A stretch of DNA of 64,000 nt, taken from NCBI GenBank assembly GCA_964247055.1, contig OZ176052.1:8680001-8744000 (forward strand). The letters run 5' to 3'. Each line of letters begins with the position of its first letter. Position 1 is the first letter of the stretch. The position numbers and the translations under genes were made by a program. This DNA comes from Paragordius varius. Taxonomy: Eukaryota; Animalia; Nematomorpha. This document shows positions 31,904 through 64,000 of this stretch, piece after piece. A model generated the notes under the pieces. It saw only the letters and a list, made by a program, of their open reading frames with translations. It was not told where the DNA came from and made no database searches.

Positions 31904-34900
31904 CCTCAGATTATCAACCATATTTAAAAAACATACGTTACTTATAGTGTAACCATTGTGTTATTAAAGAATATATTTATCAAATCAATTCAAATTTTAG
32001 TTTTTTGAGATAATTTTTTTTTGAAATTCCATCACAGTTTATAATTAAATTTTAACTTTTTCATAAACCCATTTTTTCAAAAAATTTAATTTGCATGATT
32101 TGCAACTATAAAGGTTAGATTTATTAAATGTTGTAATTTCGGACGAACAGTTAGTTACTAATGTAAAACACATATCCAATTATTTTGAAAAATAGCATAT
32201 TTTTAATACATAATCAGTAGGGATTAAATACTATTTATCTATCTATATGTATATCTATATGTAATCTAAATCGATAATCAATAACTTTGTCCAAGTTTGT
32301 TCTATTATCACAATGTTCCTTTTAAACTATGCTGAGAAGTTTATAAAAAAATAATAATTTGGAAAGTTGTTTAAACAATTTAATACAAAATTCGTTTAAT
32401 AGCTACATAATATTTTGTGTTTATTATTATGCATGATACATTCTGTCTCCTATAGATATATGTATATAGTTGTACATTACACTTTTATCCTTGGATCCTT
32501 ACAGATATTAGTTTTAAAATTGTTTAAATAATATTAATTTTTGAAAACAACTCTTTTAAAGTTAGAGGATTCGATTATTTATAATAATTATAATTTGCAA
32601 TTTTCAAAAAATAACATATCTAAGATTTTAGTTATATTATATGAATAGACATGACTTTCTTGGATTCCTTCGAATCTTATATTATAATATTTTGAAATTT
32701 ATGAAATTTAAGCTCATAATACTCTCTGAGACATATATTTTAGCTGAAATAATTTTGTTTGATTTTCACCTCTAATAAAACAAAAATGCTAAAAATTTAT
32801 TTTTTACATCATTAAACCTATTACGGATAATTATTTCTTTTATACAGACATGTCTATAATTTTTTGATGTTACTAATGTCTGCACACGATATCATAAATG
32901 TGACAAAGAATAAGAAATTTTTAATAAATTAAACCTTTTCCATCTTTTTTTGCAGTTAACTATAATGAAAAAACATTTTTTTATCATCAAACACAAAAGT
33001 TGTAAAATCATAATGATAATAATATGAAATAATGATACAATGATAATTAAAATTTAATTATTTTTATTGATTAAATAATTAACAATAATGTATTTTTCTG
33101 TTCCATTTTATAGTTGGCAAACATAATCGTCAATTTCCGTTTTTTATAAATCTTATAGGCTTTAAAAATCCTAAATTTGGAAATGTATGAAAAATTAATT
33201 TAAATAAAATTAAAATCTAAGGTCATTTAGCAAAAACAAAACTGGAGGAATTGATATTTTTGTTTAATAATACTTTAGCAAACAATGTAGAAAAATAATA
33301 AATTTATCAAGCCAGATAAATGAATTTATGTATAATTATATGGGCCGATGGAAAATGTATTATATTTTTCAACGTGTATCTTTAATTGAAGGGATGCTTT
33401 TTATACGTTTTCGTTGATTAAATTTAACAATGGGCCTTCAAAATCTTAAAATTTCGAGGATTGGACGTCATTTATAAAAAAATAAATGCAAAAAACCGGA
33501 ATTCGCTAAATAGCTCACCATCAATCGTTTCATTCTCTGTATTAAATATGACATAAAACGACAAAATTTCAATCATATATTTATTTAATAAGACAAGACA
33601 CGTTTAAAAATTAATGGCCAATATTTTAACATTTTAAAAATATCGAAAACACCCGACATAATTTTAAAATTAAATATCTTAATTTTTAACTAAACCATAC
33701 TAACGCTTTTATTTAGGAATTTAAATTTTTAAATGTGATTTCCGATGTGGTTATTTCATATTTCTTATATTATCACAAATGAATGGTAAAAATGTTAGCT
33801 GTTTGTGTAATAGCTATATAAAATTATAGCAAAGATATTGACGTGAGTTTTGTTTGACTTTTTGACTTTTTGCATTTATTTCTCTTATGTGGCGTGGAAC
33901 ACCAAACTTTTTATTACAGTATGCATTTTAATGGTTGATTATTTCACATTATAGTAGGACAATTATCAACACAGGAGTGTAGGGAAGAAAGAAAAGAAAT
34001 AAATTTTGATTCAACATTTTGCTGTTTTTTCCATACTCTACTGTGTTACAAATAGCCCAGCTATAGTGTGAACACCATTTTAATGTAAAAACTGTTTGAT
34101 ATTATATAAAAAATACATATTTTTAAACGTGTAATATATTATTTGTAAAAAAAGTATGTACCTTTGCAAAAACTTATTTTGAGGCAAAGTTGACCAACAC
34201 TGATTGAATGCATTTACGTACAATAATAGCGTATTTAGCGCTTTTTCTAGATGATTTTTTCTAATATGTTCAGATCGCCATTTCTATCCCTCGCTTTCAT
34301 ACTCAATAATAATTGTCTCCCCTATCTTAAAATTATTTGCTTTTTTTGTACACAATAATTTTTTGAAAAAAAAATTAACCATATTTCGGTTCTTTTTGTA
34401 AAAACACGTTATATTGTCACTTGAATTCATTATAATGATATTTTTTTAATAAAACTTTTTTTATCTAAATTATTTAATTTTGTGGCGATTAAAAATATCC
34501 AAATTTTATACGAAAAACTCCAATTTTCTTAGGAAAGAGATGGTATGATAGATAGCATTTTAGTTTAATTTTAGCCTATAATTGGATAATATTATTATTG
34601 TTTTATCTATCACAAAGAAATGAAATTTGATAATTTATGATATCCTTTACATTACATTTTGTCTGTCTGCTCTCAAAGCATAAAAATTATATTATCATAT
34701 TTTTCAAATCTTCAAATCTTGATTTCTATGTTTTTTGTTTGTTTTAACCAAATTCGCCAAAATATTATGATTTATTTAATTTAACATTTGTAAAACTATT
34801 TTTAGCTTTGTTGGACATTGTTTTAATTTTCTTTTACCATGACAAATTCAATGAAGGAAGGATTAGATTACATTGTCACAAGAATTTTTTTTATTGATAA

Positions 34901-36631: not shown

Positions 36632-39600
36632 ATGGACGCATTATTATCTGTATTTCGAGATCCAATTACCCAAAAGACTTATACACCGCTTCTGCACAAA
36701 CCCCTAAACAATAAATTCCCAATCTCTGCCAATGAGTGCCCGTCTACATATCCTCCCGGAGCATTCGATCTCCAAGGTACAATATGAATATCTATCTATA
36801 TTGTTTCTAAAATTTTATTTACATATTGCATGATACCAATTTTAGCAAAATTGATACTATTTGCATATATATATTAGTTAGCTATATAGGTAATATATTT
36901 TAAAGTAAATATCCGAAATTAGAAAAATTATATACATACTTTATATATATATATCCAATTATGCTTATACCTCTTTCCCGTACTCTATGTCTATGGATAT
37001 GAATCATACATACATATATATTGCATTTTTGGCAAAGTCTGCGCAAATGCTTTTAGAAAAAATTATTATTATTCAATTAATATTGATTTATGATATAAAA
37101 TAAAATCAATTATCCGTAAATGGTCAATATCATTATTTTTAAATATTTTTTTGTGTTATTTAGCTTAAGGATATTTATATGGTAATAGTCGTGTGTCCAA
37201 ATAAAAAAAGCACTTGGCGGTAGGTAAATATTTCTTTTTTAAGCCGATTTTTGACAATAATAGATTATGATAATACATAATTGGTAAAAAAGTGATGTCG
37301 AATAATTTTTTTATAAACTTAAGACTTGGTGATTATATGTTAAATATTTTTTAGGTAACATTAAATAATGATTCCATTCTATTAACATATAGGTGTAAAT
37401 TATTTAATATCAGTGATTTTTTATGAATTATACATTATGTAACGCATTAAAATATACAAAAAGCGTTTTTCATATGTAGTCGATAACAATACCCATAATT
37501 AGGCAAAATATTATCATTTTTAACTTTGAGAAGTTAGGATATGTTGTTTAATTAAAGTATATATATATTAAATATTTTGTTTAATTAAAGTATATTTTAT
37601 CGGAGCATTCAATTTTTTATGCGGAGCAATGATAAATTTAAAAAATGGCTGAAATTGCTTAGTTTTTACTTATATATGAGCTCCTCCGGATAAAATGTAC
37701 CCTTACCAAAAACTAAAAGAGATCCTGAAAATTAATTATTCAAGTTGAATGGTTGATTGAAGAAGTGGTATGCATGGGCTAATATCATGGCTTTACCTAA
37801 TTATTTATATTTAAAATAAAATATAATTTGTTAAAATAATTATGAAATGGTTGTAATTGAATGAATTCAAATTATATGTTAAAATTTAATGTTAATTTTT
37901 CAACAAGTTAAATTTAACAACATATAAACTATAATATATAATCTTATTGAATATCCGTTTTTTTTAAAACAGATGATACATAGTTATTTAACGCTGAACG
38001 TTATATTATGTTCAATAACTATTAAAATATTTTTTACATAATATGTGTTTAAAAATCATTACAATTTTAATTATCGTATATTTGATATTCTTCAACTATT
38101 TTTAGTAACATTTTGCGGCCAGTTTTTTATTAATATTTATATAGAAATGGCCTTTCATCAACATAAATTTTTCGTATATTATTTATTTGTTTGTGTGAGA
38201 TATTGATTAAATATATAACTTTTATTTCAAAATGTTTAAAAATTGGAGTTAATTACTGTCAATTTCGATGATGAAAATTAGTCTTAAAAGATATATATCA
38301 AAGATTTTTACCCGTTTTTATAAAGCTTTACTCAATACGAATGGGTTTTATTTAAATCAGGGGCGTCTAACACGCGACCCTTCAAAATATATCTGAAGCC
38401 CGCGAAAAATTTCAGATATAAATTACGGAATCTAAAAATTGACTTTAAACAATTTTACGAAATCTTTTTTCCGAATTTGGGCACTCAAGCTAGCAAAAAT
38501 TGATAATAAATTATATTTTTTACAGTTTTTTTGAATCTTATAAAATATTTGTTAATGCCCATATATTTTGCGAATGCGGCCCGACGGATTTTTCGATGTC
38601 AAGAAGCGGCCCGCGAAGCCATTTGTTTTGAACACCCCAGAGCCAACTGATTTTAATTTTAAACGATTAAAAGCCAAATGAAGTTTAATAAAGCCATAGC
38701 ACATTAAACTACGGCGAAACGTTATAAATATAGAGTTTTTCTGGTTTTTACCTATTTGTTTTAATAAAAGTTATAAAATTTACATATATTTGAAATTAAT
38801 GAAAAATTTTTTTGGAAGATTTTACAGCGTTAGTTTAACACTTCGATTCAAAATATACCCCAGACTAAATTTAAATTAAAATTTTTAAAAAACTACTAAA
38901 GAAAACGGTCCCAATTTAAATTTATGTATCAAGTATTTTTGAATAAAATTTTTTATATATTTCGGTTTATTAATGTTATATAAGTGCAAAATTTTGCCAT
39001 GGTTTCGATTGCTTTCATACATTTTAAAGTATTTGATTTTAAACAGGGCTGGGGTATCCAACTACCCCAATTTGAATCGGAGGACTAAAATGATAGTGTT
39101 GTATCCAAGTGTTAAAAGTAATAAAACGCATAAAATTTAGGAATAAAAATTATGACATGCGTATAAGATGGCTAAAATTTAAAATAAGCTTCATTTTTAT
39201 AAAATATAAATGCAAAAACTCTTAAATTCATATTTATTTTATATGAACGAAGAGGCGACAAAACGTATCATAAATATGGCATATAAACACTACCATATTG
39301 TGTCATCAAGGTCAACAAATTCAACAAAATTAAACGTATCATATTATGATTAAAAATAAATCTAAATTTTTTTTCTGTTTTAATTAAAAAAGGGTTTGGT
39401 GTGGCTTGTCGATATAAGGATTCATTCATTTCAATCAAAGTAGTACGGTTTCATCATCCATCTATTATTTTTAATTACATGCTATTCTAAAATATATTTT
39501 TTAGAGCCAATTTGGGTATACTATAATATTTTTATGCTTTTTAAGAAAAATACTCAAATTCGGGCGCTATTAGAAAAAAATCAAAAGCTTTTACTACTAT

Positions 39601-39997: not shown

Positions 39998-42900
39998 AAT
40001 ATATATACAAAGCCATCTTCCAAAACCTACGAGAGTGGTAATGGGCAAGTTTAATATAGAGACGGTAAAAATATTTTTCAATTTACAATTGAAACTTTTT
40101 AAGTTTATACTTGGTCATAAATATTTTCGTTGCCTAGATTCGAATCTAACTCGTTATATATTCTTTCCATGACTGCGACCGCTCTTATATTAACATGCTT
40201 TTATCACCTGATATAAAATAAATCAAAGTAATGGTAAAAAACTTTAATTACGCGTATAAAAAATTAAATTAATATAATGATTGTTAATAAATTGTCACAT
40301 ATGTTCTATGATCAACTAAATTCAAAAGCTATGAGCCCGGTTATTATTTGTTCATAAACAAAACCCATTCCTTTTCCTATTATTTTTTGAACAATTGCAT
40401 AAAAATTACTATGATTTTTGTGTTTTAGAAATTGTGGATAGTTATGTTTTTTTGTTAATTTTGATATTCATAATGCCAGAACTAATTACATTAATTTTTA
40501 ATTTTTTTTTGCAGTTTTCTAATACATAATATCAAAAATTTATTAATGATATGGATTTCAAAAAATATTCAAAATAAATTTTTGGTAATTGTTGCAAATC
40601 TCTAGAGATATTGAATTGGCTGTCAAACTATATAACATTTTTTTTTAAATTTAAAATTTCATAAGTATTTTATCTTCATATTGCTTTAATTTAACTAATT
40701 TCAATCATTTTTTAAGTTTCTCAGATTCGTATATATGATATTTTTAAATACTATGTTTAGAGGTGAATATTACTCGAGGGAATCAAATTTGTTAGAAAAT
40801 GTTTTCTCTGCAAAATATGATTTTATATAATTTATATTTTTTGCCAATTTAGCTTTTAAAATTTTGGTAATTTTGATAAAGAAACTAACCAGCATGCATA
40901 GAAATTATAGTTGGGTCTCATACATTGCAAATTTGGGTAATAAACCCAATATTCATTAGTCTCAGCCTTGAAGGTTCTGAACTTAAATTATTTATGAATT
41001 ATATTTATCTTTTTTTAGTCAACAACATTTTTTCAAGTAAACGTAACATTTTTTTTAAACAAAGTGTTGCGTTTGGATGAAAAAATGCTCTGTTGGCTTG
41101 AAAAAATGTTGCGTTTTGATGAATTGCGTTTGCTTGTAAAAAAATGTTGCGTTTGGATGAAAAAATGCTCTGTTGGCTTGAAAAAATGTTGCGTTTTGAT
41201 GAATTGCGTTTGCTTGTAAAAAAATGTTGCGTTTGGATGAAAAAATGTTTCATTTGCTAGAAAAAGTGTTGCCTTTGTTTAAAAAAGTTGTCTTTTCTGG
41301 AAAAAATGTTGCGTTTTCTCAAAAAATATTGTTTTTGCTTGAAAAAATGTTGTCTTTACTTAAAAAATGTTGTCTTTGCTTGAAAAGTTGTTTTTGACTG
41401 AAAAATTTTTCCATGCACAAATAAAGCGATTATGTCTTAATTTAAGGGCATATCTGCTTATAAAAAATATATAGTGATAACTTAAACAAAAACAATCAAT
41501 TCTTGTTGCCGATTGGACAAAATATTTAAAAAAAATTCCCGTAAAATTATAAATATTATCTATATTATTTATAAGTATTTTAGTTTAACCGTTTTAAAAT
41601 CATCATTTTTAATTAGTATTATTTTAATTGAATATGTAGTTTCTGCTGTCCGCGTGACAAAAAAGGTGACATCTCTTTGGTCATTCCTTAAACAAACAAT
41701 TGTGTATCTAGTATTGTTATCATATAAATGTAACTATTAAAATCGAATAGCAAGCTGTATTAAACTGTTTTTATATCATATTTATTTCTATTATATTTTT
41801 ATTGTTCAAACGCCTCAGGCCTATTGTCCTGTTCTGAATAATATATATATATTATATTTAAAATATATTATGGAAAAAATATTGGCTATAGGTGTATTTT
41901 AATTGGTTAGTAGAGAAAAATGCTAATGCACCTTGGGTTATTTTCATATTCATCACCTATTTGAAAGCTTTTATAAACAATAAACCTCTATGGTTTGTAT
42001 TGACAATGTCTTTTGACAATTTTTAATTAAAAACTTTTGCCTTAATGCCTTTGCCTGTCTTCTCTGTGTAAGCTAATGATTTATAATTAATATAATAAAA
42101 TAAAAACTTATAAATATTAATCTTTCTTATGTTAATAATAAAAGAGTTTTCATTGTAATCAAAGGATTTTTTCCTATTTTTAATCTATCTTTGGTTAGAA
42201 CAGGTGTTTTTACATTTTAGTTATGTATGTTATCATATTTACGTTTTGTACTGTAATCCTAAATTTTGAACCTAAAAAATTCCCAAAAAGTGTTATTTTC
42301 ATTAATATTTATGAGCTGAAAATGTGGAACTGCCAAGCCGAAGTTATATTATAATATGGGATTTTTTCATCTCATTTTGTTAGTGTATATATAAAAATAT
42401 AATTTTCACTCTTTTTATGGTTTTTATAAGGCTTGAATTTCCCAAATATTTCAAGTTTAGAGTTAATTTACAAAGAGCATACCTCTATTAATAATTTTAT
42501 TTTGCAAAAAATTTACATTTATAACCTTATTTCTACCCTTGGCTTATCTGTTCTTTGTAATATAGATTGGATCTCAACATATTTCTATGAAGGGGAACGA
42601 TACAATTAAATAAATTAAGTAGTGACTTTAATACATATATAATTGCTTCCGTATTGTTCGTTTAATCAAATTAATGTTTTTTAGAGGTAATGATATATTT
42701 CAGGGTTTTTTCCCAAAAACATGCATGCCATTTAATCGTTTCCTTATTATAGATTCCTAAATGTCTTTAATGTAAATAATGTTAGATTCTTAATATTTTT
42801 TCCAACTTCTCTGTTATAATATAATCAATCAATCACGACCAATTATATATGAGATGTGCCTGTTCTTTCGTGATCTCAAAAATAAAATTATACTTGTAGT

Positions 42901-45900
42901 AAAAATTGATTTTATTAACTTTGTATGTTATGTAATGTGAAATCTTTTCTTCTAAAATCCTTGTAACCATTATGTCATATACTAGTATTTACAGAATAAT
43001 ATATACATATTTAATGTTAGGATGTCATGTCATAATCAATAAAAAAGTGATTTAGTAAAAGTTAATAAATGGATTCTTTCTTTCAAAGTTTTTCCAAAAC
43101 TTATAAATCTAAAAAAACCGTAAATCATTACTTACTGTTATTGTTGTTGAAATAATTAAATTAAATTGTTAATTAATTTGATGCTTGAAAATCATAACTA
43201 ATAAACACAAAGCATTAGTAATTTTTTTAGAATATTTGCGTGCACACAATGTCAATGGCGACAAAAACGTGCACATGAATTTTAACGAAAAAATTGGAAA
43301 AATATTAACTATTTATCAAATTAATCTATCTATAAATAATTGATTGAATTTGGGGATTTTACCATAACAAATTTCAAATAAAGTCATGAGGAAATAAACG
43401 CAAAAATACAAACAGCTGATTTGTTTTGTGTGCATAGGTACCCACTCATAATTACCTTTTTAAATACCTTTCTATAGTTGAGAATTTTTTTGACATTTAA
43501 ATTTTACCTTGGTTTTGGCAATGGTAATATAATATTTATACATTTACTACACAATTTTGTCATCACTAAATTATTTCATTGGCCCCATAGATCGAAATTT
43601 TCCGAATCCAGATACATGAGTTCTATAAAATATTTTTATGTTAACAACGAATTCGATATGCCATGTTTTTCACGAGTAATTCAAGCAATCATGGCAAAAA
43701 TTTAATATGAACCAAATTAAATCTCAAAAATTTTGACTGCTTCTCTACGCCCTCAAATGCCAGAATGCTGGAATCCTATATTTAAAAATTGATTTTTATT
43801 ATAAAATTTTATCTCTATCTACGATTAATTTTTTTATATTTTCAGAACCGTACTGCAACGCCACATTTGATTTGGTAATATGTTGGCCACCAACCAAACC
43901 AGGTGTCCTTATTATGCAATCATGTCCACCCCTTAAAGGAATTGATACCACGAGTAATTAATTTTCATTTCATAATTATTTTTACAACAAAGGTACATAA
44001 TAGGGAGAATCTAATGTATAATGGGTGCAATATGTCAAATAAACAATACAGTTTTATATATTGCTAGAAAATATAACCGAAGTCCTTGCTTTCAAAAAAA
44101 AATATTTTTCAAATGACTAAAAAGAAATTTTTTTAAAAAAATGTTAATACTTTTAAAGTTACAAGTGCTATTATATTATTATTTATAATTTTTTTGGATG
44201 TATGACACATGACTAAAATCTAATTTTATTTTATAGGCATTCAAGCATATTTTTAATTAAATATGAAGTTGTATTATAATGACTCACAAAATATCCAAAT
44301 TGAATCAAAAAATATCCACATACTCAGACATAATATACAATATAATAGAAATATAACTAAAATATACGGCGTTTCTGTTCATTATTTAGTATTTTCATGA
44401 AAATTTATTTTGTAAATCACAAATTCAATTATTTTAATTATACCTGTTTTATGTCACTTAAATTAGATTGTACCAATTTTAGAGAGTTATATACCCTGAT
44501 TAAGATACGTATATCAGCAAATATTATTTAGAGTTTTCCTTTAAATATATATGTATAAAACTTAGCAAATTAATTTCTAAGAGATTAAAGTTTTGGCACT
44601 ATCTGTGAATATGTAATGTAATTTTATGATCCCTTCAAGTTAATAAATATTAGTATATATATTAATTTTTATAAGTTATATATAGTCTCTTTGAAAGATT
44701 GTAAACACAAAATGATCATGATGGATTTAGATGTAAATTTAATGCTTCCCTACAAAAAACTGTTTAGAAACAAACATCTTTTTGTGGTCAACACATGGAA
44801 TGTCGTGTCTGACCCGTGTTTTTCTTCTTTTGACAGAATTAAGTCCTCTCTTCTCTCTCTCTAGCATTTAACAGTTTAAAAAATATAAATTGTTAACTGT
44901 GAGTGTTAACCTCTTACTTTTTTATGACTTAATAGCGGGAAAGATAAGAATAAGAATAAATATCGATTTTATACCACAATAAAAACCACCAATAAAACTT
45001 ATAAAAAACGAGACTGTGGTAGGTAGCTTGAGATAAAAAATGGTGACAGAAAAAAATAATTTGCATTTACAATTTTAATCTTTTTATTATATTTAACAAA
45101 TTAGGATTTAATTTTTCTTTAGTGGCTTGTAAATGCGCGTTAGGTTAGGGAATTGAGCAAAAAAAACAAAAATGAAATGGATAAAATTTGATGAACAGGA
45201 GTAGTTAGATTTTATACATGCATGTGCGTAATTTTTTGTCAAAAAAAATTTTTCACATAAATTATTTATTATTAGAACCAAAAAAAAAGATTTTGATATT
45301 GGGACAAAGGAGAAAAAACGTTTTAAATTATTATTATGCTAGCATATTATAATTATAATAATTGGTGTATGTAATGGATAACTTTTTGCATAATAATAAC
45401 TAAAAAAATGTATTAATATATAAATGGGACATTTATATGCAAATCTTTTAAACCGCGCGCGCGCTTCTAAAAATAGTTTTTTCGTTTTTTCGCGCTTGTA
45501 CAAGTGGTCAAACTTAACTACAAACAATTATTTATATGGTGGTGTTTTATAAATTATTATGCAAATGTGAAAAAGCCAAACGGATAAATATAATATGCAT
45601 TTTAATGGGTGCTTTTTTCACACCATAGTATAAATGTAAAAAATTATGAATGATATTAAATTAATAAAAATTAAACGCTGTTCAAATTGTTCTTATTACG
45701 TAAAATAGGAATCGATATTCGGTTTTAATACATTCTCAGGATTTTTGAATTAGACTTTTTAAAAAACCTAGATTATTATGCTTCATTTAATTTTAAATAG
45801 GATCGACAAATATTTGAATTATCTTTACAAATAAATATCATAAAAGTTTCATGTTTTGATTAAATTAGAAAAATGGTTTTATAAAATTAGCCGTTCTTTT

Positions 45901-48900
45901 AACATATAGCATTAAATATCATGGGAATCTGTTTACTTCTTAGAGCAAATTGAAAGCAGCATTGTTCGATTTTTTGAACACAAATTTTAAAACGCCATAT
46001 TGTTTAATTGATATTTTGATAGTCGAGCGATTTTTTGGAGACGATCTAAAAAAATGATAAATTTGGATGGAATTGTTATATTTGTCTCAATATGTAATAA
46101 TTATATATTCTATTTGCCTATTAATTAATATTGGATTAATCATTTGTTTTCATTGAAAACAGTAATCTATGAATCCCATATTTTTTTGAATCAGGGGATT
46201 ATTTAAAAGTTTTGAGTTATATTAAGGTAAACGGCTGAAACTAAAAATATTTTATTATTAATACATCTTAGTCAAAAAAAGATAATGATTAAAATAAGGG
46301 ATTAGTTTTTTAAAAAATTAATTAAAATTTTGATTTTACATAATAAAATAATGGGGAAAATTATATAATATTTAGCAAGAATTAGTTTTTTAATCAGGAC
46401 ATACATCTTTTTAATTTTATAAAAGCTATAAGCAAACCAAAAATTATGTGAAAAACTCCATTTTTATTGATAAAAATATATATATATATATATATGTATA
46501 TGTATATAGAATATGCATTTCGAAAATGTGATTTCAATGGAAGATGGTTAGAGAATGAAAACCTTCCCAGGGCTGGTGCTTCGAATGTCGGTTGGACCAA
46601 TTACACCATGTGTTTTAACCCATATGCCAGTGATTTGTACAATAAAATTAAACCACATATGGAAGTAAGTATAAATGATTGTTAAAAAGGCGGGTACAAG
46701 TGGCGTCGCTAAGGGGAGTTGAAGGGTCGCCGGATTTTAAATTTTTTAATTTTTAATTTAAAAAAATAGGTATCTAAAATTATCTTCAATAATTTGATTA
46801 TTTTTTTTAAATGCAAGGGGTGCATGGAAGGGGAGGGGGCGCCAGAAATGCAAGCTACGCCTCTGTATAACTCTCATAATACAAAGCTCGGCGCTATAAT
46901 TGAGAGATATGAAATTACTTTTTATAAAATAAACTTTTTAAAAAAAGTAAGATGTTATATCAACGATTTATGCATTAGACGCCACAAAGGCTTGTTAAAC
47001 GATTGATATAGTAAATTAAATTATAAAGGCAAACCTTAAAAATCAATTTTTTATATGGCAACTATATTTAAAGCTTGTTTTAGCAGAATAACCTATCATT
47101 TTGGGTTGCAAAAAGAAAAAAAGATGCAATCGTTAACTCATATTAGTACGTTTAAAAATTGAATGTATTTAGGTGTTATATAGAAAAAAGCAAGGTATAG
47201 AAAATTTGATTAACTTTATCAAAAAATTATCTTTTCCACGGTTTTTTATCTAAATATTATATAAAATTTTGTAATTTTTTAGATGATTTCAAGGGTCACA
47301 TTTTCCACGCGTATAATGGAAATGGTAGGCTTATGTTTGTCGCTCATATCATTAATCATTGCAATATTCATATTCTTTCATTTCAGGTAATTAATTATAG
47401 AATTTTTATTTAAAATATTATAACTACTAGATGGGTTTAATTTAGTTAAATTTGTTAAAAACAGAATTTTGTAATTCTTTGAACATTCATGATATATTAA
47501 GAGATAATTAAAATTTCAGAATTATAAACATATGGCCCCATAAACTAAGTTGTTTTTTTTGTCTTCTTATAATAATTATAACATCTGATAAATGTAAATT
47601 ACAGCTTAAATATTTTTCACATACATAAATAATATTATAATTACTTTTCGCTCTGTCGCGAAAAATTTATGCTAAATTTTAAATCATACTGTCAAAAATA
47701 AAAAAAAGGATCATTCAAAAAAATAATGAATAATTTATTAACAATTTGTGTGGCTTTCTTCTTTTTTGACTTTATGAATTCTTTGAAGAAGCAAAGATTT
47801 GTTTTGCCATTTCTGTTTTTGGTTTTTTTAATTAGTGAATAAAAATCCTTATTTATGGCTAAATTAGTGGGATTATTTTTATGTATTAAATGTAAAATGT
47901 TAATAAAAAAGGAGAATTAAGTAGTTACATTAGATGCGTGTGACCTTGCCAATTTGGATAATTATAAGAATTTTGTACTTATGCGCGTAATTATAAATCA
48001 TATGGCGATGGTGTCACTTTTACGCAAATGCATGAAAATGAAATCAAATTTTTATGGCTAAATTATAATCTATTTTGACATTTGAGATGAAATGGTTTAG
48101 TTTACTAAATAATTTACTGCGTCACCTTGATTACGTTATTTATTCATGATTAATAAATTTGAAATATTTTATCACTAAAAAGTTTAGATGATGATTTTTT
48201 TGAGAACTTGGGCTCAGAGCGGACTCATAAAAGATATAAAAGTGTTTAAGCTTGTTTTAATATAATATTTTGAATCTTTCAATTAAAGCTTGACCGTATA
48301 AATTTTATTTTGGAAAAATTACATTCATTTAAATAATACATAATATAAATTTATGGGCTTTGATATTTTATTTGATTGCTTAACAGTTCTGGGTGTATCT
48401 TTTAAACATCCGTAATTTAGATTGAAGAGGGGCGAATTTAAAGACTGACAATAATTAACTCTATTTTACAATATGATCAAACTTACCATTTTACCCTCAT
48501 AGAAAATTATTTTTCAATGAAAGTTTATTGTAAAAAAATGTTAAACTTGAATCTGACCCGGCGTGTTTGTGTACAATTGATTCGGATATATGCGGATTTA
48601 TGTGATAATCTTATTCTAGCCCAAAATACTTATCATTATTTTTTGGTTAAATTAATAATTTAGCGTTACCCAAACCATTGTTATCAGTTATTAAAATATT
48701 TTTTTTGTAATACATTAAAAAACTATATGGTTAGTTATTAATTCTCTATGACACTCTCATATTTAGGGGTACATAAACCTTAACATTTAAAGCAAGACAT
48801 AAATTTTTTCGATTTTATATACCAGGAGCTTGAGAAACGATCGCACCAAAATCCACCGAAACCTGTTCATAGCCATGATTATGCAAGTGCTCATAAGGCT

Positions 48901-51900
48901 AATTGTTTATTCAGATCAATATGCCACAAAATCGGTTAATCTTTCCGTCCAACCCAAACATGCCGGTCAGAAGGGAATAGATAATACTGTATATAAAAAC
49001 TTTTAATAAATATTTCAAATTATCAAAACTTAATGTACATAATATATATTTACTTGTCATCAGGAAATTTTATGTGAATCCTTTTACATCCTGATGGAAT
49101 ATGCAAAAACTGTACTGTTTATGTGGATGCTGGTCGAAGGTTATCAACTGCACAATGTCATTGTGGCATCAGTATTTGAATCGAAACCTAAAATGTGGAT
49201 GTTTAAATTAATTGGATGGGGTAAAAAATTGTTGAAATTATTTATAAATACAACTCTTTGAGAGAAACTGATTTTACTAAAACTCCTTCATTTCTATAAC
49301 AAATAGAGGGAATAAAATTATGCTTTTTTAGGTGTGCCGCTAATCTTGACGGGAACGTGGGCCGGTGTATATGCCCAAGTCAAGAATAAATCAAAGTATA
49401 TTATATTTTATGGTAATTATTATATATAAAAGAGTTTATTGATAACCAAAATAATTAAAATCATAACTCGTTTGATTGTGCGAAATCTTTGTGAAAATTA
49501 ATTTATATTAGTAATTCGTTGATATATAATATTTAATAGTTACGTTACTATTTTAAAATGATAGATGTTGGCATTTATATTCATTTTCTCCGTACTATTG
49601 GATCCTTGAAGGACCGCGCTTAGCAGTTATCATAGTATAATTTTAAAAATTAAACATTTCTTAATTTTTTTCTACATCTTACTTGATATATTTTTTATAG
49701 ATCAATCTTGCATTTTTGCTCAACATTATACGCGTTTTGGTTATGAAAATGAGGGATTCAAGATCACCAGAATCTCAACAATTAAAGTACGTATTAAAAA
49801 GAATGTTTAAAAAAACACGGATTAAAAATTTATTGCACACATATTATAGCAATGATAAATCAATATTTTTTACATATTTTTTATCATGGAAAAATCGACA
49901 CAAAGTTCATACAGTTTTTTATTTTGTGGTTATAATAAAAGAAGTGTATATAATTTATATGTATTTACACACATTAGAAAAGCTGTAAAAGCTGCAATCG
50001 TATTGCTACCCCTGTTAGGGATTACAAACAGTTTAAACATGATCCCAACTCCTTGGGGACAAGTGTCTTTTATCATTTGGACGTATGGAGCTTATTTCCT
50101 AATCTCTTTCCAAGGATTTTTCGTTTCACTCATCTATTGCTTTTGCAATCATGAGGTCATTGATACTGTCATAAATTTTTTTAATATTTATTCCCTTTTT
50201 TTGTATTTACATCATCTTTTAGCAACGTTTTAAGGAGAACATTTTTGTATATGAAAATAGGATATCTTTTATATACCCTAACTCAATATAATGATGACAA
50301 GAGGTTGATGTGAATGTATGGTTTTAATATCACAGTAGTTTATGAAATTGATTAAAATATAAGGTGTTTCGTTAAATCATGATGATGGATTAAAAAACTA
50401 TCGTTTGTAATACTTTAATAATTTCTTTGCTTGATAATACTATAATATAATGCTCCATAAGGTTACCTTTAGAAATCTATTTTTTTGCATATCAGGTAAG
50501 ACAAACCTTAAAAACAGCGTGGACCAGACGAACTTTGAACCCAGTCGTCAATAGTAAGCATTTTTAATTATAGATACTTCTGTTGGTATAAAACACTTAA
50601 AGCAATCATCCATAGATAAATTAGTCGTTTTCTTGTTTAATTTTAATAAAACTAATTTAGTAAAATAATTAATTATTATCTAAACAGCTAAAAAATATTT
50701 TTATATTTCTAATTTACATAGGAGGCAGTGATGCGAATCTTTTCTCCCGGCTATCAGTCTTTGTAAATATATTTTTTTAAGCATATTATCATTTATTTGC
50801 TTTTTGTGTAAATTGCATGGTCTGTGCGCGCTTCATTAAAAAATTAGTCTGCATGAGAATTCCAAAGCAAACGTAATCAAATTATTATGTTGAAATTTTG
50901 AAAGAATTAATTTATAAGGCTTAAATATGTTTGTTAATATATGTTGAAGTGTTACGTCAATTTACGCGCTTTAAAAATAACCAGGAAAGTTGTAATATTT
51001 TGTGACACCGGTTTGAATACCGATTTGAACGTGCATAACATTTATAACCATTATGGCCCTTTAATATTATAAAAGCGAACATTTTTAAATTGAACTATTT
51101 AAAAAAAATAACTTCAATAGCAATAATATTAAAATGTTTCTATTTCAAATTTGACCATTTTTATCACATATTTGACTGGTTATTATTTCAAGTGGTCACA
51201 GTAACCAAAATGCCTAAATAACCGGAATGCATTCTGTTCTTAAGAAGAAATAACAAATTATAATTTAAAAATTTTTTATAACAAGTGTCACTTCATGAAA
51301 ATCAACTTATTAATGTAAACTAATAAATAACTGTGTAGGATTTTTTTTCACAAGATAGCTTATAATCAGCTAATTCATCTGTTAAAATAATTTTGGTTGA
51401 CCCCTACATTTTGAAATAGTGAGAAATATATTAGGCAAAAAGCGAAAATTAAGGATAATTGGATGAATAAAAAAATAATGATAAAATTTGTAAAATTCAT
51501 TATTTTATCAGATAATTACAATTTATAAATAGCCTAAAATCATAAAGTTGGGGTTTTTATTAATACTCATCTAAACATCGTATTTAACATAGTTAATACA
51601 CAATTAAAATGTAATAAAACTATATTAAAATAATATTTTTAATTATTTTCTTGTTATACTAACTATTAAAATCTTAGCATTCATATTTTATTTATCAAAA
51701 TAAAATTAATATATCGTTTTTTACCTTTTCATTTTTTTGGTTTATGAGTGTATAATAAATTTACTGTAATGATTTGGAATCTTACATGAGTCGGAATTTT
51801 AAAGTATATAAATTAACAAAATAGGATTTACAAGTGTTGAATGTCAACCAATTCGTACAAAAACACGATGTTTTGATCTAATTTTCAATAAACCCCTAAT

Positions 51901-53721
51901 TATAAGATTTTAAGCTATTTATAAATTGTAAATATCTCATAAAATGATAATGAATTTAAAGATCTCAAGATTCATCATTATTTTTTTCATTAATTTTCGC
52001 TTCGCCCAATTTCTATTTTCTCTCAATATTTTAAAAACTTGGTCGTAAACAAATAAAGAATTTTGCTACAAAAAAATTTGCTTAAGCTATCTCATTAAAA
52101 AAATGACCCTCTTTTTTGCGCTTGTAAGTAGGCATTACTAACGATGTATTTACATTAAACGAAAGAAATTAAGATGGTTTTAACTAATTTTAAGTTTGCC
52201 ATTATGCTAAAAAGTGACTTATCGTATTTCTTACGCAATTGTTAAATGATCTAATATGACATATTTTAGGGAAATCATCTGAGTGGACAGCGGCTATCCG
52301 CGATTACAATTACCGGCCCTTTAAGAAGATTAAACAGTGCCGCTCCGAGATTTTCGTTCCTTTCACCAAACCATTCTCATCTGCTTCATCCTTATCACAT
52401 TACAAACGATCCTGGTTATCTCTCGCCCCTAACACGAAGCGTCAAACCCTTTTCCCCAACAACAATTGCTACTTTGGTAGAGGGGAGAGCGGGGAATCAA
52501 TTCCACCCCACCAATCAGAAAACCCCAAAATACTTACCATGTCACCAAAACACAATTTCCACAACAGCGAAGGACATGATTCCAACTTCCGAGAAGAACA
52601 TAAAAAGTACAAAAATCAGTACTTCAATGGACTCTTACGAGGCTCCTCCTCAACAACAACGAATTGCAATGGCCCGGTCAGTCGGAAAGATGTCACATCA
52701 TCTCTTTCATCAACGGCGTTCAACGTCGGCCCTTCGAAATCGACAAGTCTTTTTTGGGCTAAACAGCACCCATCATCATGGCAAACACAATCTCCCTCAA
52801 AACCACTTGTCAAATACATTGATGATTTCCTCTGTTTACCCAAGCCAAAACACGTCAATGGATACTTATCAAAAGAAAAAAATGAGCTTGATATCAAAAA
52901 TAAAATCAGTTCCGACTCTGCAACACCTTTGGTGTTTGGCAGAGAAACGGCCGGGAAAGGTATTGAACCACAAACCACAAGTAATTATTCAAACCTCGGA
53001 GAAAATGGTCGAACTTCCGTTAAATTCATCACAAACGATCCAATGTCTCCCGAATGAGGCCGTTTACCTTCACTCAAATTATGATAATAAAATTGATAAC
53101 AGAGCAGTAACTAATCACCATAAAGGAGAAAAAAATTTAAACATTATTAATTATTCTGCTTTAAACAACACTATACCCAAACCAACCCTAAAAACCAGTG
53201 CAATATTAAATCGTGTTAGAAATCTTTTTTGCTTAAAAAGACAATTAAATAAATCCAATGATCAACAATTAAATACTTCTGCTAGCACCACCAATATTAT
53301 TATTGGTTTAAATAAGAATGATAACAATATTTTATGTAACTCAACCAATGGTACTGTTTCATCAAACACATCAGATGAAGAAAATAAACCAAAAAAATAC
53401 TCATTTAACAAAATAATCCATAATGCTGAAAATGTTTCAAATTCCTCGGCCCCCAATCGTTTTAATTGTTGGCTAAATTATCTAAATAATTCTGCCGTTC
53501 CTTTCTCAAACAACATACAAACGACACAACTTAGTGTAGGAAGTGAAAACAATTTTGTAAATTTTCAAGGGGCAAAGCTCATAGAATTTGCTCATAACAA
53601 AGGATATTATGTAGGCGAGGGTAAGGCTTATACTTATTACTCCCCCAAAAAGGGAAAAATGTTAACTCATAAAAGATCAAGTACCCAAACCTCTAATGAA
53701 ACCGAAGAAACTTTTATTTAA
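36632..53721 (+). CDS. Pdfr: Class B (secretin-family) GPCR, PDF-receptor type, with very long C-terminal tail
   Basis: Exons 36632-36776, 43846-43953, 46510-46664, 47283-47386, 48826-48988, 49064-49220, 49332-49395, 49565-49634, 49701-49786, 49978-50155, 50496-50553, 50722-50762 and 52270-53721 are all phase-compatible. Hormone-binding domain: CNATFDLVICWPPT...CPPLKG...RKCDFNGRW...GWTNYTMCF. 7TM motifs: RSLRNDRTKIHRNLFIAMIMQVLIRL, GIDNT-EILCE, YYWILEGPRLAVI, KAVKAAIVLLPLLGITN, FQGFFVSLIYCFCNHEV. The PDFR subtype call is from recalled motifs, not a phylogeny. Confidence 0.88.
38358..38640 (-). mobile_element. hAT-type MITE family C, copy 4 (in PDFR intron 1)
   Basis: Runs CAGGGGCGTCTAACACGCGACCC ... 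GCGGCCCGCGAAGCCATTTGTTTTGAACACCCCAG. TSD not recovered. Confidence 0.7.
38839..39111. mobile_element. TTAA-flanked (piggyBac-like) MITE, copy 2
   Basis: TTAA on both sides (38835-38838, 39112-39115). Matches 839-937 plus 1234-1410 and lacks the ~290-bp internal segment of copy 1. Confidence 0.75.
39946..39993. repeat. (TA)n microsatellite
   Basis: About 24 consecutive TA units. Confidence 0.95.
41030..41405. repeat. Minisatellite of ~20-bp units (aaaaaatgttgcgttt...) with an exact 80-bp higher-order repeat
   Basis: gttgcgtttggatgaaaaaatg recurs at 41066, 41146 and 41226. The flanking units are degenerate. Confidence 0.9.
46697..46865. mobile_element. Small MITE-like insertion in PDFR intron 3
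   Basis: GC-rich termini AGTGGCGTCGCTA ... AGCTACGCCTCTG form an imperfect inverted repeat. TSD not identified. Confidence 0.45.
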
Positions 53722-60536: not shown

Positions 60537-63500
60537 CTAAAGTAGTATATCATCTAATCCTTGCAGCATAAATTTCCCCACAACTCCAATCACCAATGTT
60601 ACAGTAATGATATAATGTGGAAAGGAAAAGCGAATTTGGGTTGAACCGCCACTGATATAACTTGTGTAAGGTTGGCTACTGCTTTGTTCAATATCGTTTG
60701 ATACGTCATCGATTTGGTGTTTATGGGCATACAAACCTTTTGTGCAAAAAAAGAGAATACATTTTTTTCTAAAATCCCTTGGAAGGAAAATGTAATAATA
60801 ATGGATTAACAAAATATAAATTTTGGATAATGCCAAAATAGTGGTAAATTATATAAATTTATAAACAAAGATCACTGATTTTTTGTTAAAACTAGGGATT
60901 TAAACCAGAAGCGTTTTAGTAACGGAACAATTTGGAACCACAATGATTTTCTATTTTTCTAAAATTTTGATCATTTATTTTTTCAAAGGAGAGCATGCAT
61001 TAAATTTTTATAGTTAATCTCATAATATGTTTGCTGACTTTAATCCATATTGCATTAATATAATAGGTTATCCGTAAATTGAAATGAAACCAAATCACAA
61101 TCATTGGATCAAAAAAAACAATGTAAATTTTTTTGCGCAAAGAATATACTAAAAAATTCTTTAAAACCGGAATTTCGGATCCAACCTTTGGTTAAAACCT
61201 TGATCAACAATATTTCGATTTCAGTCATATTTAAACCAATTTATATTTTATGAAAAGCAAAATATATTAAGCATTTTAATAAATTGTATCGTGGGTTTTC
61301 TTCGTTTCTAAACGCAAACTTACAAAAATACTTTATAAGGGATTATTTGCCACAATTTTTACAATAGCATATCTTAGATTAATTCCAAAATAAACATCTT
61401 TTCCGAATACCATTACCTTAGTAAATTTTAAAATTAAAATTTCGATTCTCGTTATATTTTATGGGAACCATATTAATTTTTAATAATGAAGCAAGATATA
61501 AGTTGCAATCTTACCAATATGATCTTTAATATTGTTGTCGTATTTGGTGGCTTCATCATTTCTTGTCATTGTTGTAGTTTGTGGCGGTATTGTCGATTTA
61601 TAAATGACTATTTGAAATTAATATATGAAAAGGATTTAAAATAATATATTAGACATAATGAAAATATAAATATTTAGTTTTATTTTTTTAAAAAAAATTA
61701 TGATTTAATTTCATTTTTCGTAATTTTAGTTATACAGCTCTATATTGATGTATCAATTAAGTATATTTTCGCCATTCTTAATTTTGGTAAAGTTGATATT
61801 AGCATATCTTAAATCCTTTTTTGATTTAAAAGTTATATTACGCGTTAAATTTGGAATTTCGTGAGCCTTATTAGACATTTTGTTAAAAAATAATTTACAA
61901 GTATACAGTTATCAATAATATCATTTACTTCAAAAATCAGCCAACATATTTAGCATTGGTATAAAAATGTGTAAACAATTAACGAAGAGTAAAATGTAAG
62001 GATAACTAATAACAACCTCTAATCCTAAAATTTTTTCTATCCTTCCCATAATCATTTTTACCGACACATCTATAAATCCCAGAAAGTTGTGGATGTCCCT
62101 TGGGTATGTGCAAAACTGTCTCCATGACATCCGGTGATAAATGACGGTTATATATCATTCTAGATTCAAATTTTTTTATTTTAATTTGGTAAATATATAT
62201 ATATATAGGTATATAATTTTCCTTATGGTTTTAAAAATAAAATTTAGTTTGTTAATTAACAAATTATATATACATATCACGTTGGAAATCGACTCTTTAA
62301 ATTAAACTTATGACTTTAATACTTTGTAAATTTGACTAATTAAATATATTTAAAGTAAACACTCTTACATAAAATTAAAAATACTATATAAATGATTTTT
62401 TAATAAGAAAATATTTAGAAAAATATAAAATTAATAAATGTTGATAGACTTACATGTGTATATTGTTAGTAATTTTGACCCTATCTTTGAGCCAAATTGT
62501 GTTTGGAGAAGGGTAGCCCTTAAACAAACAGCTAATGTTAATAGAATCACCTGTGTAGGAGATATCATCGTTGATAAGGCCCAAAGTATGAGCTTTGTTT
62601 GATGGCTCAATATCCACAATTTTCGGTGGATCTATAAATTATCATTAGTAAAAGTACTTCTAGTATTTTAATAAAATAAATTATTGGTGACATTTTTTAT
62701 TTTTACCTGAAATCGACGCGGTATATATTTAAAAAAACAATTTCAAAGATCTTTCTTGGACAAGTAAGCAGTACCATAAAAAATAAGGGTATTATTTATT
62801 TTTAGAGTTTTTATTTTTATAAAATGTAGTAGACAGGTTAGGGTTTGGGATTATACAAATAAAAAGTAAATGGACTGATTTTTTTGTTAATTTAAAAATT
62901 AACCGTTGTGATCAATTAATTTAAACTTATAATATTACTATATCTTAACACTCAACCTATGTGATATGATTTAATTTGTATCGCATGATAAGCTTATGTC
63001 TAATTTTTTAGAGCTTCAAAGCTACGGTCCAACCAGGACAGACCTAGCCCACTCTAGCACATTATAAAACAAAAAAATTTGATTTTTGAATTTTTTATTC
63101 TTTTTCATGTTTGTTACTGTAGTAAAAAACACAATTTTAATTATTTTAATCAATTTATTCAAAAAATAGTGATTCTAGTTAAATACCAAATAAACAGATT
63201 GAAAAACTCGTCCAATAATGATCACAGTTAAAAATATTTTAAAAAAAAATATTTTTCACTGTAAAAATGGTAAACCTCATATAATTTATATTAATAATTT
63301 TACATTTTATGTTAACTTGAATTTGACGGCTTACACTTGGTTGAATTCCATTTTCTGCCAAACAGACATAAATTCCAGCATCATGGCTACTAACATTGTT
63401 TAAAATAAGTTCTGTCCCTTGCTTGTTTAGGAGAACTATATAAATTATATATTATAAAATCATTGTGGGAAAACTGAAAATAATTTAATTTGGATTATAT

Positions 63501-63785
63501 ATATAAATTTGATTTTATATAGCGAGTTTTATTTTATTTTCTAATTTTTTTGGGAAAAGCTTTTTATAGATTACAGATAGTACAAATTGTAATTACTGAA
63601 ACTCCTTTCTAGCAATGTTTTAGGAAAAGTTTTATTGTCATACACTTTGATGGGCGTATCGACGAATCGGGCCCAACTTATGTTGGGAACAGGATTACCA
63701 TGGCTTAAGCATCGTAAAACCACATTTTGGCCAGTCAAACTTTGAATATCTTGAGATGTTTCGTCATTTATAATCTTAGGTGAAT
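60537..63785 (-). CDS. Lachesin/DIP/IgLON-type Ig-superfamily adhesion protein, 3' part (Ig2, Ig3, hydrophobic C-terminus); 5' end lies beyond the window
   Basis: Exons (minus): 63785-63597, 63435-63304, 62631-62454, 62159-62017, 61607-61515, 60736-60537. Ig motifs: GQNVVLRCLSHGNPVPNISW...DAGIYVCLAENGIQPSVSRQIQVNIKYPPKI and GDSINISCLFKGYPSPNTIWLKD...SGIYRCVGKNDYG. The C-terminus HYIITVTLVIGVVGKFMLQGLDDILL* is compatible with a GPI signal or a short TM segment. Confidence 0.8.
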
Positions 63786-64000
63786 CTAAAAATATATCAG
63801 TTTAAGTAAGTTGATTTTGGCAAATATTTGAGCAAAAAAATAATTAGACTTAATGACTAAGCAGTTTCATTTTAGATCAAGGGTTGTAGAAAGAAAAAGA
63901 GTATTTTTGTTTGCAATACAGCAGCTTTTTTCTCTTCTATAGATATAGCCGCTTAATATAAGTGAATATATTTTTCGAAAAACTTGATTGTCAAACCAAT

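What the first reader, a model, noticed from the sequence alone, without database searches (positions are those of the whole stretch)
50722..53721. Dual-coding terminal exon of the PDF receptor, selected by a 41-nt cassette exon
Seen: from the acceptor at 52270 two frames are both stop-free until 53057. With the 41-nt exon 50722-50762 included, the junction is phase 0 and reads GNHLSGQRLSAI...ETEETFI* (483 aa, to 53721). With it skipped, exon 50496-50553 (phase 1) joins into RKSSEWTAAIRDYNY...MSPKHNF...NDPMSPE* (about 262 aa, to 53057). A second frame free of stops for ~260 codons is very unlikely by chance in this AT-rich genome, so both frames appear to be maintained (inference). One receptor could then carry two unrelated Ser/Thr-rich cytoplasmic tails with different arrestin/GRK coupling.
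Basis: partly seen in the sequence, partly recalled or inferred. Interest (0 to 1): 0.75.

Follow-up and report, generated by a model that had tools for sequence, protein, structure and literature searches.

The report
Two-frame tail exon of PDF receptor
The last exon of a horsehair-worm neuropeptide (PDF) receptor gene can be read in two reading frames for 788 bases, a 41-base optional exon decides which, and a second worm genus keeps the same arrangement, so the receptor most likely comes with two unrelated inner tails.

Summary
From the acceptor at 52270, frame F1 is open to 53721 (483 codons) and frame F3 to 53057 (262 codons). The third frame has 16 stops.

This is not chance. With F1 held fixed, shuffles expect 11-17 stops in F3 and none of 3000 was open. 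Five other long exons in the window reach only 25-41 open codons in that relative frame.

The gene is a PDF-receptor orthologue. Its nearest relative is Gordionus sp. m LOC135928415, which has the same layout:
- a phase-1 helix-8 exon;
- a 41-nt cassette with the same splice sites and a similar peptide;
- a terminal exon whose F3-equivalent frame is open for 149 codons, against 6-8 stops expected.

The first 27 F3 codons are conserved between the two worms. Of 19 base differences, 14 fall on F3 third positions and 9 codons differ only synonymously, so F3 is under protein-level selection. F1 is supported by the conserved cassette, a normal coding signature after 53057, a shared C-terminal motif and the Gordionus gene models.

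No RNA or peptide data could be reached, and no F3-type isoform is annotated in Gordionus.

This is a new member of a known kind: the Drosophila GPCR moody has a 704-nt two-frame exon.

The parts
43833..50155 (+). Upstream exons of the PDF-receptor gene: hormone-receptor domain and seven-helix core. The last TM6-7 exon is 49979-50155.
   Evidence: Pfam HRM and 7tm_2 hits on the exon translations. tblastn of the Gordionus orthologue maps its residues 72-440 collinearly onto the window. The TM6-7 exon is 88% identical to Gordionus P0001.
50496..50553 (+). Helix-8 exon, 58 nt, ending in phase 1 with one spare A.
   Evidence: Translation. AG acceptor and GTAAGC donor. The homologous Gordionus exon L003:33740-33803 is also phase 1. 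Reading through the donor meets TAA after 4 codons.
50722..50762 (+). 41-nt cassette exon. Including it sets the terminal exon to frame F1.
   Evidence: AG|GAGG...TTT|GTAAAT; peptide. The Gordionus cassette L003:37728-37768 is also 41 nt with the same splice-site context. Its peptide is similar and includes synonymous changes such as CGG/AGA, both Arg. The peptide resembles the motif that follows helix 8 in other PDF receptors.
52270..53721 (+). Terminal exon coding part read in F1: 483 codons plus the stop. This is the cassette-included isoform.
   Evidence: Open frame. The part after 53057 has the usual T-rich third position and a positive codon score. The C-terminal motif at 53563-53640 is shared with Gordionus. 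The Gordionus models X1 and X2 read the homologous exon in this frame.
52270..53057 (+). Dual-coded stretch of 788 nt. F3 reads it as a split Arg codon (A from 50553 plus GG at 52270-71), then 261 codons at 52272-53054, then the stop at 53055-57. This is the cassette-skipped isoform.
   Evidence: Open frame; shuffles; window baseline. GC is 0.43 here against 0.30 after 53057, and base composition is flat across codon positions. F1 and F3 both score near zero on the codon model while F2 is strongly negative. The Gordionus counterpart is open for 149 codons.
52272..52355 (+). Conserved head of the F3 tail, 28 codons, pattern SSEWT..IR.YNY.PFK.IKQC.
   Evidence: BLASTP against Gordionus F3 gives 19/28 identical, 24/28 positive, E 1e-10. 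Of 19 base differences, 14 lie on F3 third positions and 9 codons differ only synonymously; binomial P is 3.8e-4. The local alignment score is 105 in F3 and 49 in F1 for the same bases.

Best explanation
**What it is.** This is the 3' end of the PDF-receptor gene (a class B neuropeptide GPCR) of a horsehair worm. The exon that ends helix 8 stops in phase 1.

**Cassette included.** If the 41-nt cassette 50722-50762 is spliced in, the shared acceptor at 52270 is entered in phase 0. The terminal exon is then read in F1. The result is a tail of about 497 residues (14 from the cassette, 483 from the exon). It starts with the family-typical Ser-rich motif and ends in a motif shared with Gordionus.

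**Cassette skipped.** If the cassette is skipped, the same acceptor is entered in phase 1 and the same 788 bases are read in F3. The result is an unrelated 262-residue tail with a conserved juxtamembrane head of about 27 residues. This tail lacks the family motif.

**Shown here:**
- both frames are open far beyond chance in two genera;
- the cassette is conserved;
- the F3 head is under protein-level purifying selection;
- the F1 part after 53057 has a normal coding signature.

**Inferred:**
- the skipped mRNA is made and translated;
- swapping the whole cytoplasmic tail changes phosphorylation, arrestin binding, trafficking or G-protein coupling of the receptor.
For: - **Geometry and phases:**
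- **Chance excluded in the window:**
- **Orthologue:** the TM6-7 exon finds Gordionus sp. m LOC135928415 at 88% identity. Its locus L003 has the same exon plan.
- **F3 kept in Gordionus:** the F3-equivalent frame is open for 149 codons. With F1 fixed, 0 of 3000 shuffles were open and 5.9-8.2 stops were expected. Downstream of the overlap the same frame has 39 stops in 340 codons.
- **Selection on the F3 head:** 14 of 19 differences fall on F3 third positions and 9 codons differ only synonymously, P 3.8e-4. These positions are second positions in F1, so F1-only coding does not explain the pattern.
- **Entry by splicing:** neither species has an in-frame ATG before the conserved head, so F3 must be entered from the upstream exon.
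- **Cassette is coding:** 41 nt in both, the same AG|GAGG and |GTAAAT context, and Arg kept through CGG/AGA.
- **Composition:** GC rises in the overlap in both species, 0.43 against 0.30 and 0.49 against 0.42, as expected when stops must be avoided in two frames.
- **Precedent:** the Drosophila GPCR moody uses two frames of one exon for two C-tails. Its 704-nt overlap is the longest in FlyBase and both isoforms are functional (PMC4528330; PMC9624432).
Against: - No transcript, Ribo-seq or peptide evidence for the skipped junction could be reached.
- A search that would have found a Gordionus protein of about 606 residues with the F3 tail returned only the two F1-type isoforms.
- Beyond the 27-codon head, neither F3 nor the overlapping part of F1 can be aligned between the genera (P 0.43 and 0.10). 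Selection on the rest of each tail therefore rests on openness alone.
- In Gordionus, F1 being open given F3 is not significant with own-codon shuffles (0.44-0.67).
- Only two genera could be compared.
Confidence: 0.8

Rival explanations
1. Separate tails, no true dual coding. F3 would be the only frame translated across 52270-53057. Cassette-containing transcripts would splice to an internal acceptor near 53058 and read only the F1 part after 53057. F1 would then be open across the overlap by luck.
For: - F1 is the +1 frame relative to F3, and +1 frames are stop-poor in this genome: runs of up to 141 open codons occur in other exons.
- With F3 fixed, F1 stays open in 0.1-0.6% of own-codon shuffles in the window and in 44-67% in Gordionus.
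- An AG at 53057-58 would start an exon exactly in F1 phase.
Against: - That AG has no pyrimidine tract, unlike the acceptors of this gene.
- The corresponding AG in Gordionus is out of phase.
- Both Gordionus models join the cassette, or the 41-nt donor extension, to the same acceptor as F3 and read 490 codons without a break.
- F3 third positions in the overlap lack the usual T-rich, GC-poor composition expected if F3 alone were coding.
- Under the window's usual codon usage, 9.6 stops would be expected in F1.
Confidence: 0.08
2. One protein only, with a hidden frame change. Translation would start the exon in F3 and move to F1 near 53000. The cause would be an ultra-short intron of the kind this genome has elsewhere, or a one-base assembly error.
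For:
- GT..AG candidates with length 1 mod 3 exist at 52960-52981 (22 nt) and 53019-53058 (40 nt).
Against: - The candidates are 59-60% A+T and not T-rich, unlike the tiny introns seen.
- The idea leaves the conserved coding 41-nt cassette without a purpose.
- F1 would still be open upstream only by chance.
- Gordionus, an independent assembly, shows the same two open frames with a different overlap length.
Confidence: 0.04
3. F3 is not translated. Its openness and conserved head would reflect RNA-level constraints near the acceptor, such as splicing enhancers or structure, or the base composition of an F1-only exon.
For: - No F3 isoform is annotated in Gordionus.
- Conservation is confined to the first 85 nt or so after the acceptor, where splicing signals are often found.
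Against: - The substitutions follow a three-base rhythm on F3 third positions, with 9 synonymous codons. RNA signals do not produce such a rhythm.
- Both indels in the head are 3 nt long.
- Shuffles that keep the F1 protein and its codon content still expect 6-17 stops in F3 in both species.
Confidence: 0.06

Closest known systems
Drosophila GPCR moody (alpha and beta isoforms; Bainton et al. 2005, as summarised in PMC4528330 and PMC9624432)
   Same: Alternative splicing makes one exon be read in two frames, giving one receptor core two unrelated long cytoplasmic C-tails. The arrangement is kept between species. The overlap is 704 nt, against 788 nt here.
   Different: moody is a rhodopsin-like orphan receptor of glia, not a class B neuropeptide receptor. 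There is no sequence relation between the two. For moody both proteins were demonstrated experimentally; here neither isoform was seen as RNA or protein.
Human alternatively spliced dual-coding regions with different C-termini (Tress et al. 2026, bioRxiv 10.64898/2026.05.28.727796; Chung et al. 2007, PMC1868773)
   Same: A non-triplet splice event shifts the frame of downstream coding sequence. Both frames are preserved across species. Such genes are enriched in the nervous system.
   Different: Those are vertebrate genes tested with many genomes and with peptides. Here there are two genomes and no expression data. No PDF-receptor case came up in the papers I looked at.
Known C-tail isoforms of PDF receptors (Drosophila PDFR-PA and PD, PMC9624432; 22 predicted isoforms in the nemertean Lineus longissimus)
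   Same: The same receptor family diversifies its cytoplasmic tail by alternative splicing. In Drosophila the isoforms differ in arrestin-binding motifs.
   Different: In the Lineus predictions every isoform keeps the conserved RRLSR..S.F motif after helix 8 and varies further downstream. In the worm the switch sits at that motif and replaces the whole tail by a frame change in one long exon.

Membership tests
PDF receptor (class B / secretin-family GPCR) | N-terminal hormone-receptor domain plus secretin-type seven-helix core | tested here: met
   Pfam HRM (E 3.7e-8) and 7tm_2 (E down to 1.1e-14) on the exon translations.
PDF receptor (class B / secretin-family GPCR) | Closest named relatives are PDF receptors rather than other class B receptors | tested here: met
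   Tested through the Gordionus orthologue, which is 88% identical in TM6-7 and collinear with the window's exons. Its best named hits are PDF receptors of an onychophoran, Anopheles, Schistocerca and Lineus (E 1e-126 to 1e-112). Calcitonin and PTH receptors score lower.
PDF receptor (class B / secretin-family GPCR) | Activated by PDF peptides | not testable with these tools
   This needs a cell-based assay.
Alternatively spliced dual-coding (multiphasic) exon | Two frames of the same bases open well beyond chance | tested here: met
   for the window; for Gordionus.
Alternatively spliced dual-coding (multiphasic) exon | An upstream splice choice of non-triplet length that switches the frame | tested here: inconclusive
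   A 41-nt exon with canonical, conserved splice sites exists in both genera, and its inclusion is modelled in Gordionus. Skipping of the cassette was not observed, because no RNA data were reachable.
Alternatively spliced dual-coding (multiphasic) exon | Purifying selection in both frames | tested here: inconclusive
   F3 head: a clear third-position and synonymous pattern. F1: the conserved cassette, the coding signature after 53057 and the C-terminal motif. Inside the overlap, F1-specific selection rests on openness only.
Alternatively spliced dual-coding (multiphasic) exon | Both protein products made | not testable with these tools
   This needs proteomics, Ribo-seq or tagged alleles.

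The most novel reading that the evidence does not exclude
The F3 tail is a horsehair-worm-specific protein segment born by overprinting on the ancestral PDF-receptor tail. It has been kept as a second, functional cytoplasmic tail since before the two genera split. The 41-nt cassette then acts as a binary switch between a canonical, motif-bearing receptor and a lineage-specific one with different signalling or trafficking. With moody, this would be a second, independent case in which a GPCR C-tail became a long two-frame exon.
Probability: 0.5. Interest if true: 0.65.

Novelty: new member of a known kind. Interest (0 to 1): 0.6.

Why it matters
Long stretches that code in two frames are costly to keep, so they mark places where both products matter.

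This overlap is 788 nt. That is longer than the longest annotated in Drosophila melanogaster, which is 704 nt and also lies in a GPCR tail (PMC4528330). The arrangement is kept in two worm genera.

It sits in the receptor for PDF, a neuropeptide studied for its control of daily locomotor rhythms in flies and of locomotion in nematodes. It would give one receptor core two entirely different cytoplasmic tails through one small splice choice. That makes tail-dependent signalling easy to test. It also offers a case of new protein sequence arising by overprinting in a little-studied animal phylum.

Gene annotators should note that current Gordionus models list only one of the two frames.

Tried and rejected
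**Searches that found nothing**
- Word-based protein searches with each tail gave no hits. The tool's length filter would exclude full-length receptors, so this says little.
- The window's own genome has no paralogue of either tail.
- Pfam and PDB sequences match neither tail.
- A local BLASTP of both tails of both species against 263 collected class B receptors found no relative of F3 outside horsehair worms. For F1 it found only the two Gordionus models, at E 2.7-6.1.
- Exact look-ups of P0001 and of the Lineus protein found no record. P0151 gave the Gordionus locus.

**Ideas tested and set aside**
- Tiny-intron scan: the candidates do not resemble this genome's tiny introns.
- Internal acceptor near the F3 stop: weak in the window and out of phase in Gordionus.
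- Conservation beyond the F3 head: not detectable in either frame.

- I built and searched no joined, spliced full-length isoform protein.
- No transcript data set could be queried.
Full report
**1. The observation**

- Exon 50496-50553 follows an AG and is followed by GTAAGC. It translates to VRQTLKTAWTRRTLNPVVN with one base left over, so it ends in phase 1.
- The 41-nt exon 50722-50762 lies between AG and GTAAAT and encodes GSDANLFSRLSVF after a split Arg codon.
- From the acceptor at 52270, frame F1 runs for 483 codons to a stop at 53719-53721.
- Frame F3 runs for 261 codons to a stop at 53055-53057.
- The third frame has 16 stops in the shared stretch.

**2. Is it chance?**

- With the F1 protein held fixed, I used synonymous resampling with the window's codon usage, synonymous permutation within the region, and codon-order shuffling. 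They expect 16.9, 11.5 and 15.4 stops in F3. None of 3000 shuffles in any scheme was open.
- With F3 held fixed, F1 stays open in 0.1-0.6% of own-codon shuffles. Under the usual codon usage, 9.6 stops are expected and no shuffle was open.
- As an empirical baseline, five other exons of 164-1278 codons in this window have longest open runs of 25-41 codons in the +2 frame. That is the position F3 holds relative to F1. Here the run is 261.
- The overlap has raised GC (0.43 against 0.30 after 53057) and an almost flat base composition over the three codon positions. The F1 part after 53057 shows the T-rich third position of the window's other exons.
- A codon-usage score trained on those exons is near zero for both F1 and F3 in the overlap, strongly negative for F2, and clearly positive for F1 alone after 53057.

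**3. What gene is it?**

The upstream exons carry the hormone-receptor domain and the secretin-type seven-helix core.

The tails found nothing in the word-based protein search, whose length filter excludes full-length receptors. They also found no paralogue in the window's own 110.6-Mb genome.

I therefore searched the TM6-7 exon (49979-50155) against the representative library. The top hit, P0001, is 88% identical and 960 residues long. It is LOC135928415 isoform X2 of the horsehair worm Gordionus sp. m RMFG-2023, and P0151 is isoform X1. The best named relatives of that protein are PDF receptors of an onychophoran, mosquitoes, locusts and a nemertean. The Gordionus protein maps collinearly onto the window's exons.

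**4. The relative has the same arrangement**

The Gordionus locus (L003) has these parts:
- a helix-8 exon ending in phase 1 (33740-33803);
- a 41-nt cassette (37728-37768), used by X1;
- a terminal exon starting at 38957, read in the F1-equivalent frame for 490 codons.

Isoform X2 reaches the same frame in another way. It uses a donor 41 nt further downstream in the helix-8 exon. In the window that route is closed by a TAA after 4 codons.

The two cassettes share AG|GAGG and |GTAAAT(A). Their peptides are similar (GSDANLFSRLSVF and GSEGSVVSRHSIV), with synonymous differences that include CGG/AGA for Arg. The Ser-rich end of the cassette resembles the RRLSR..S.F motif that follows helix 8 in PDF receptors of nemerteans, annelids, molluscs and an onychophoran. 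This last point is an inference from short motifs.

**5. The second frame is kept in the relative**

In Gordionus the F3-equivalent frame is open for 149 codons from the acceptor. With F1 fixed, shuffles expect 5.9-8.2 stops and none of 3000 was open. Downstream of the overlap the same frame has 39 stops in 340 codons. GC is again higher in the overlap (0.49 against 0.42).

The F3 peptides of the two worms align over their first 28 residues: 19 identical, 24 positive, E 1e-10. The shared pattern is SSEWT..IR.YNY.PFK.IKQC.

A codon-by-codon comparison of 27 aligned F3 codons finds 19 base differences. Fourteen are on F3 third positions, and 9 codons differ only synonymously. Both indels are 3 nt long. 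The chance of 14 or more of 19 differences falling on one given position is 3.8e-4.

These positions are second positions in F1, where every change alters the amino acid. The same bases score 105 when aligned in F3 and 49 in F1. So this head has been selected as F3 protein. Neither species has an in-frame ATG before the head, so ribosomes must enter F3 from the upstream exon. That happens through the direct junction that skips the cassette.

**6. Support for F1**
- The cassette is a conserved coding exon whose only effect on frame is to select F1.
- The F1 part after 53057 is open for a further 221 codons in 30%-GC sequence with a normal coding signature.
- A C-terminal motif (QG...E....GYY.G.G) is shared with Gordionus.
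- Total F1 lengths are similar, 483 and 490 codons.
- Both Gordionus models read the exon in F1 without interruption.

**7. Limits**
- Beyond the F3 head, neither frame can be aligned between the genera. Selection on the remainder of both tails is inferred from openness alone.
- I could reach no RNA or peptide data.
- A search that would have found a Gordionus protein of about 606 residues with the F3 tail returned only the F1-type cluster.
- I built no joined spliced protein and searched none. All searches were exon by exon and by reference.

**8. Rivals**
- *Internal acceptor near 53058.* This would make the tails non-overlapping. It is weak because that AG lacks a pyrimidine tract, its Gordionus counterpart is out of phase, and F1 would have to be open by a 0.1-0.6% chance.
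- *Tiny intron or assembly error shifting F3 to F1.* The candidates do not look like this genome's tiny introns. The idea also leaves the conserved cassette unexplained.
- *RNA-level constraint instead of F3 translation.* This does not explain a three-base substitution rhythm.

**9. Comparison with what is known**

FlyBase lists 83 Drosophila genes with two-frame overlaps above 63 nt. The longest is 704 nt in the GPCR moody, where both C-tail isoforms are functional (PMC4528330). Both D. melanogaster and D. virilis use alternative frames of that exon (PMC9624432).

In humans, 537 dual-coding regions giving different C-termini have been analysed. Of these, 105 show selection in both frames, and the genes are enriched in brain (bioRxiv 10.64898/2026.05.28.727796; see also PMC1868773).

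PDF receptors themselves vary their tails by splicing: PA and PD in Drosophila and 22 predicted isoforms in Lineus. All 15 Lineus isoforms I could list keep the motif after helix 8.

The worm case is therefore a new member of a known kind. It stands out for three things: the length of its overlap, the position of the switch at the family motif, and its conservation in two genera of a little-studied phylum.

**10. Verdict**

My confidence in the two-isoform, two-frame reading is about 0.8.

Noticed in passing
L003:33740-33844 (Gordionus sp. m): Gordionus isoform X2 reaches the F1 frame by using a second donor exactly 41 nt downstream in the helix-8 exon instead of the 41-nt cassette. That gives a different 14-residue insert, so this species has two separate 41-nt routes into the same frame. 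The window species cannot use this route because of an in-frame TAA.
   Followed up: partly
proteins P0165 and P0264-P0277 (Lineus longissimus PDF receptor-like): The nemertean gene has 22 predicted isoforms. The 15 that could be listed differ mostly in the C-tail downstream of the conserved RRLSRTFSVFTSVTEMP motif, with several alternative C-terminal ends. Heavy splicing of the PDF-receptor tail is therefore not confined to insects.
   Followed up: partly
window 15267-16445 and 16021-16461, + strand: A 393-codon open exon-like stretch of another gene contains a 147-codon open stretch in its +1 frame. That frame is generally stop-poor here, so this is probably chance. It served as a baseline.
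   Followed up: partly
window 41000-41400, both strands: A repetitive block is open in several frames on both strands, with repeated peptide units such as KKMLRLDEKM on + and related units on -. It looks like a tandem or low-complexity repeat inside a PDF-receptor-region intron or intergenic space.
   Followed up: no
window 62434-63801, - strand: Open stretches here have immunoglobulin-domain-like wording, such as LRCLSHGNPVPNISW and SCLFKGYPSPNTIW. They suggest exons of an Ig-superfamily gene on the minus strand.
   Followed up: no
window 18470-22303, + strand: There is a single 1278-codon open exon, Ser/Asn/Lys-rich, belonging to an upstream gene (with further exons around 14000-18200). I used it only as a codon-usage reference and did not identify it.
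   Followed up: no
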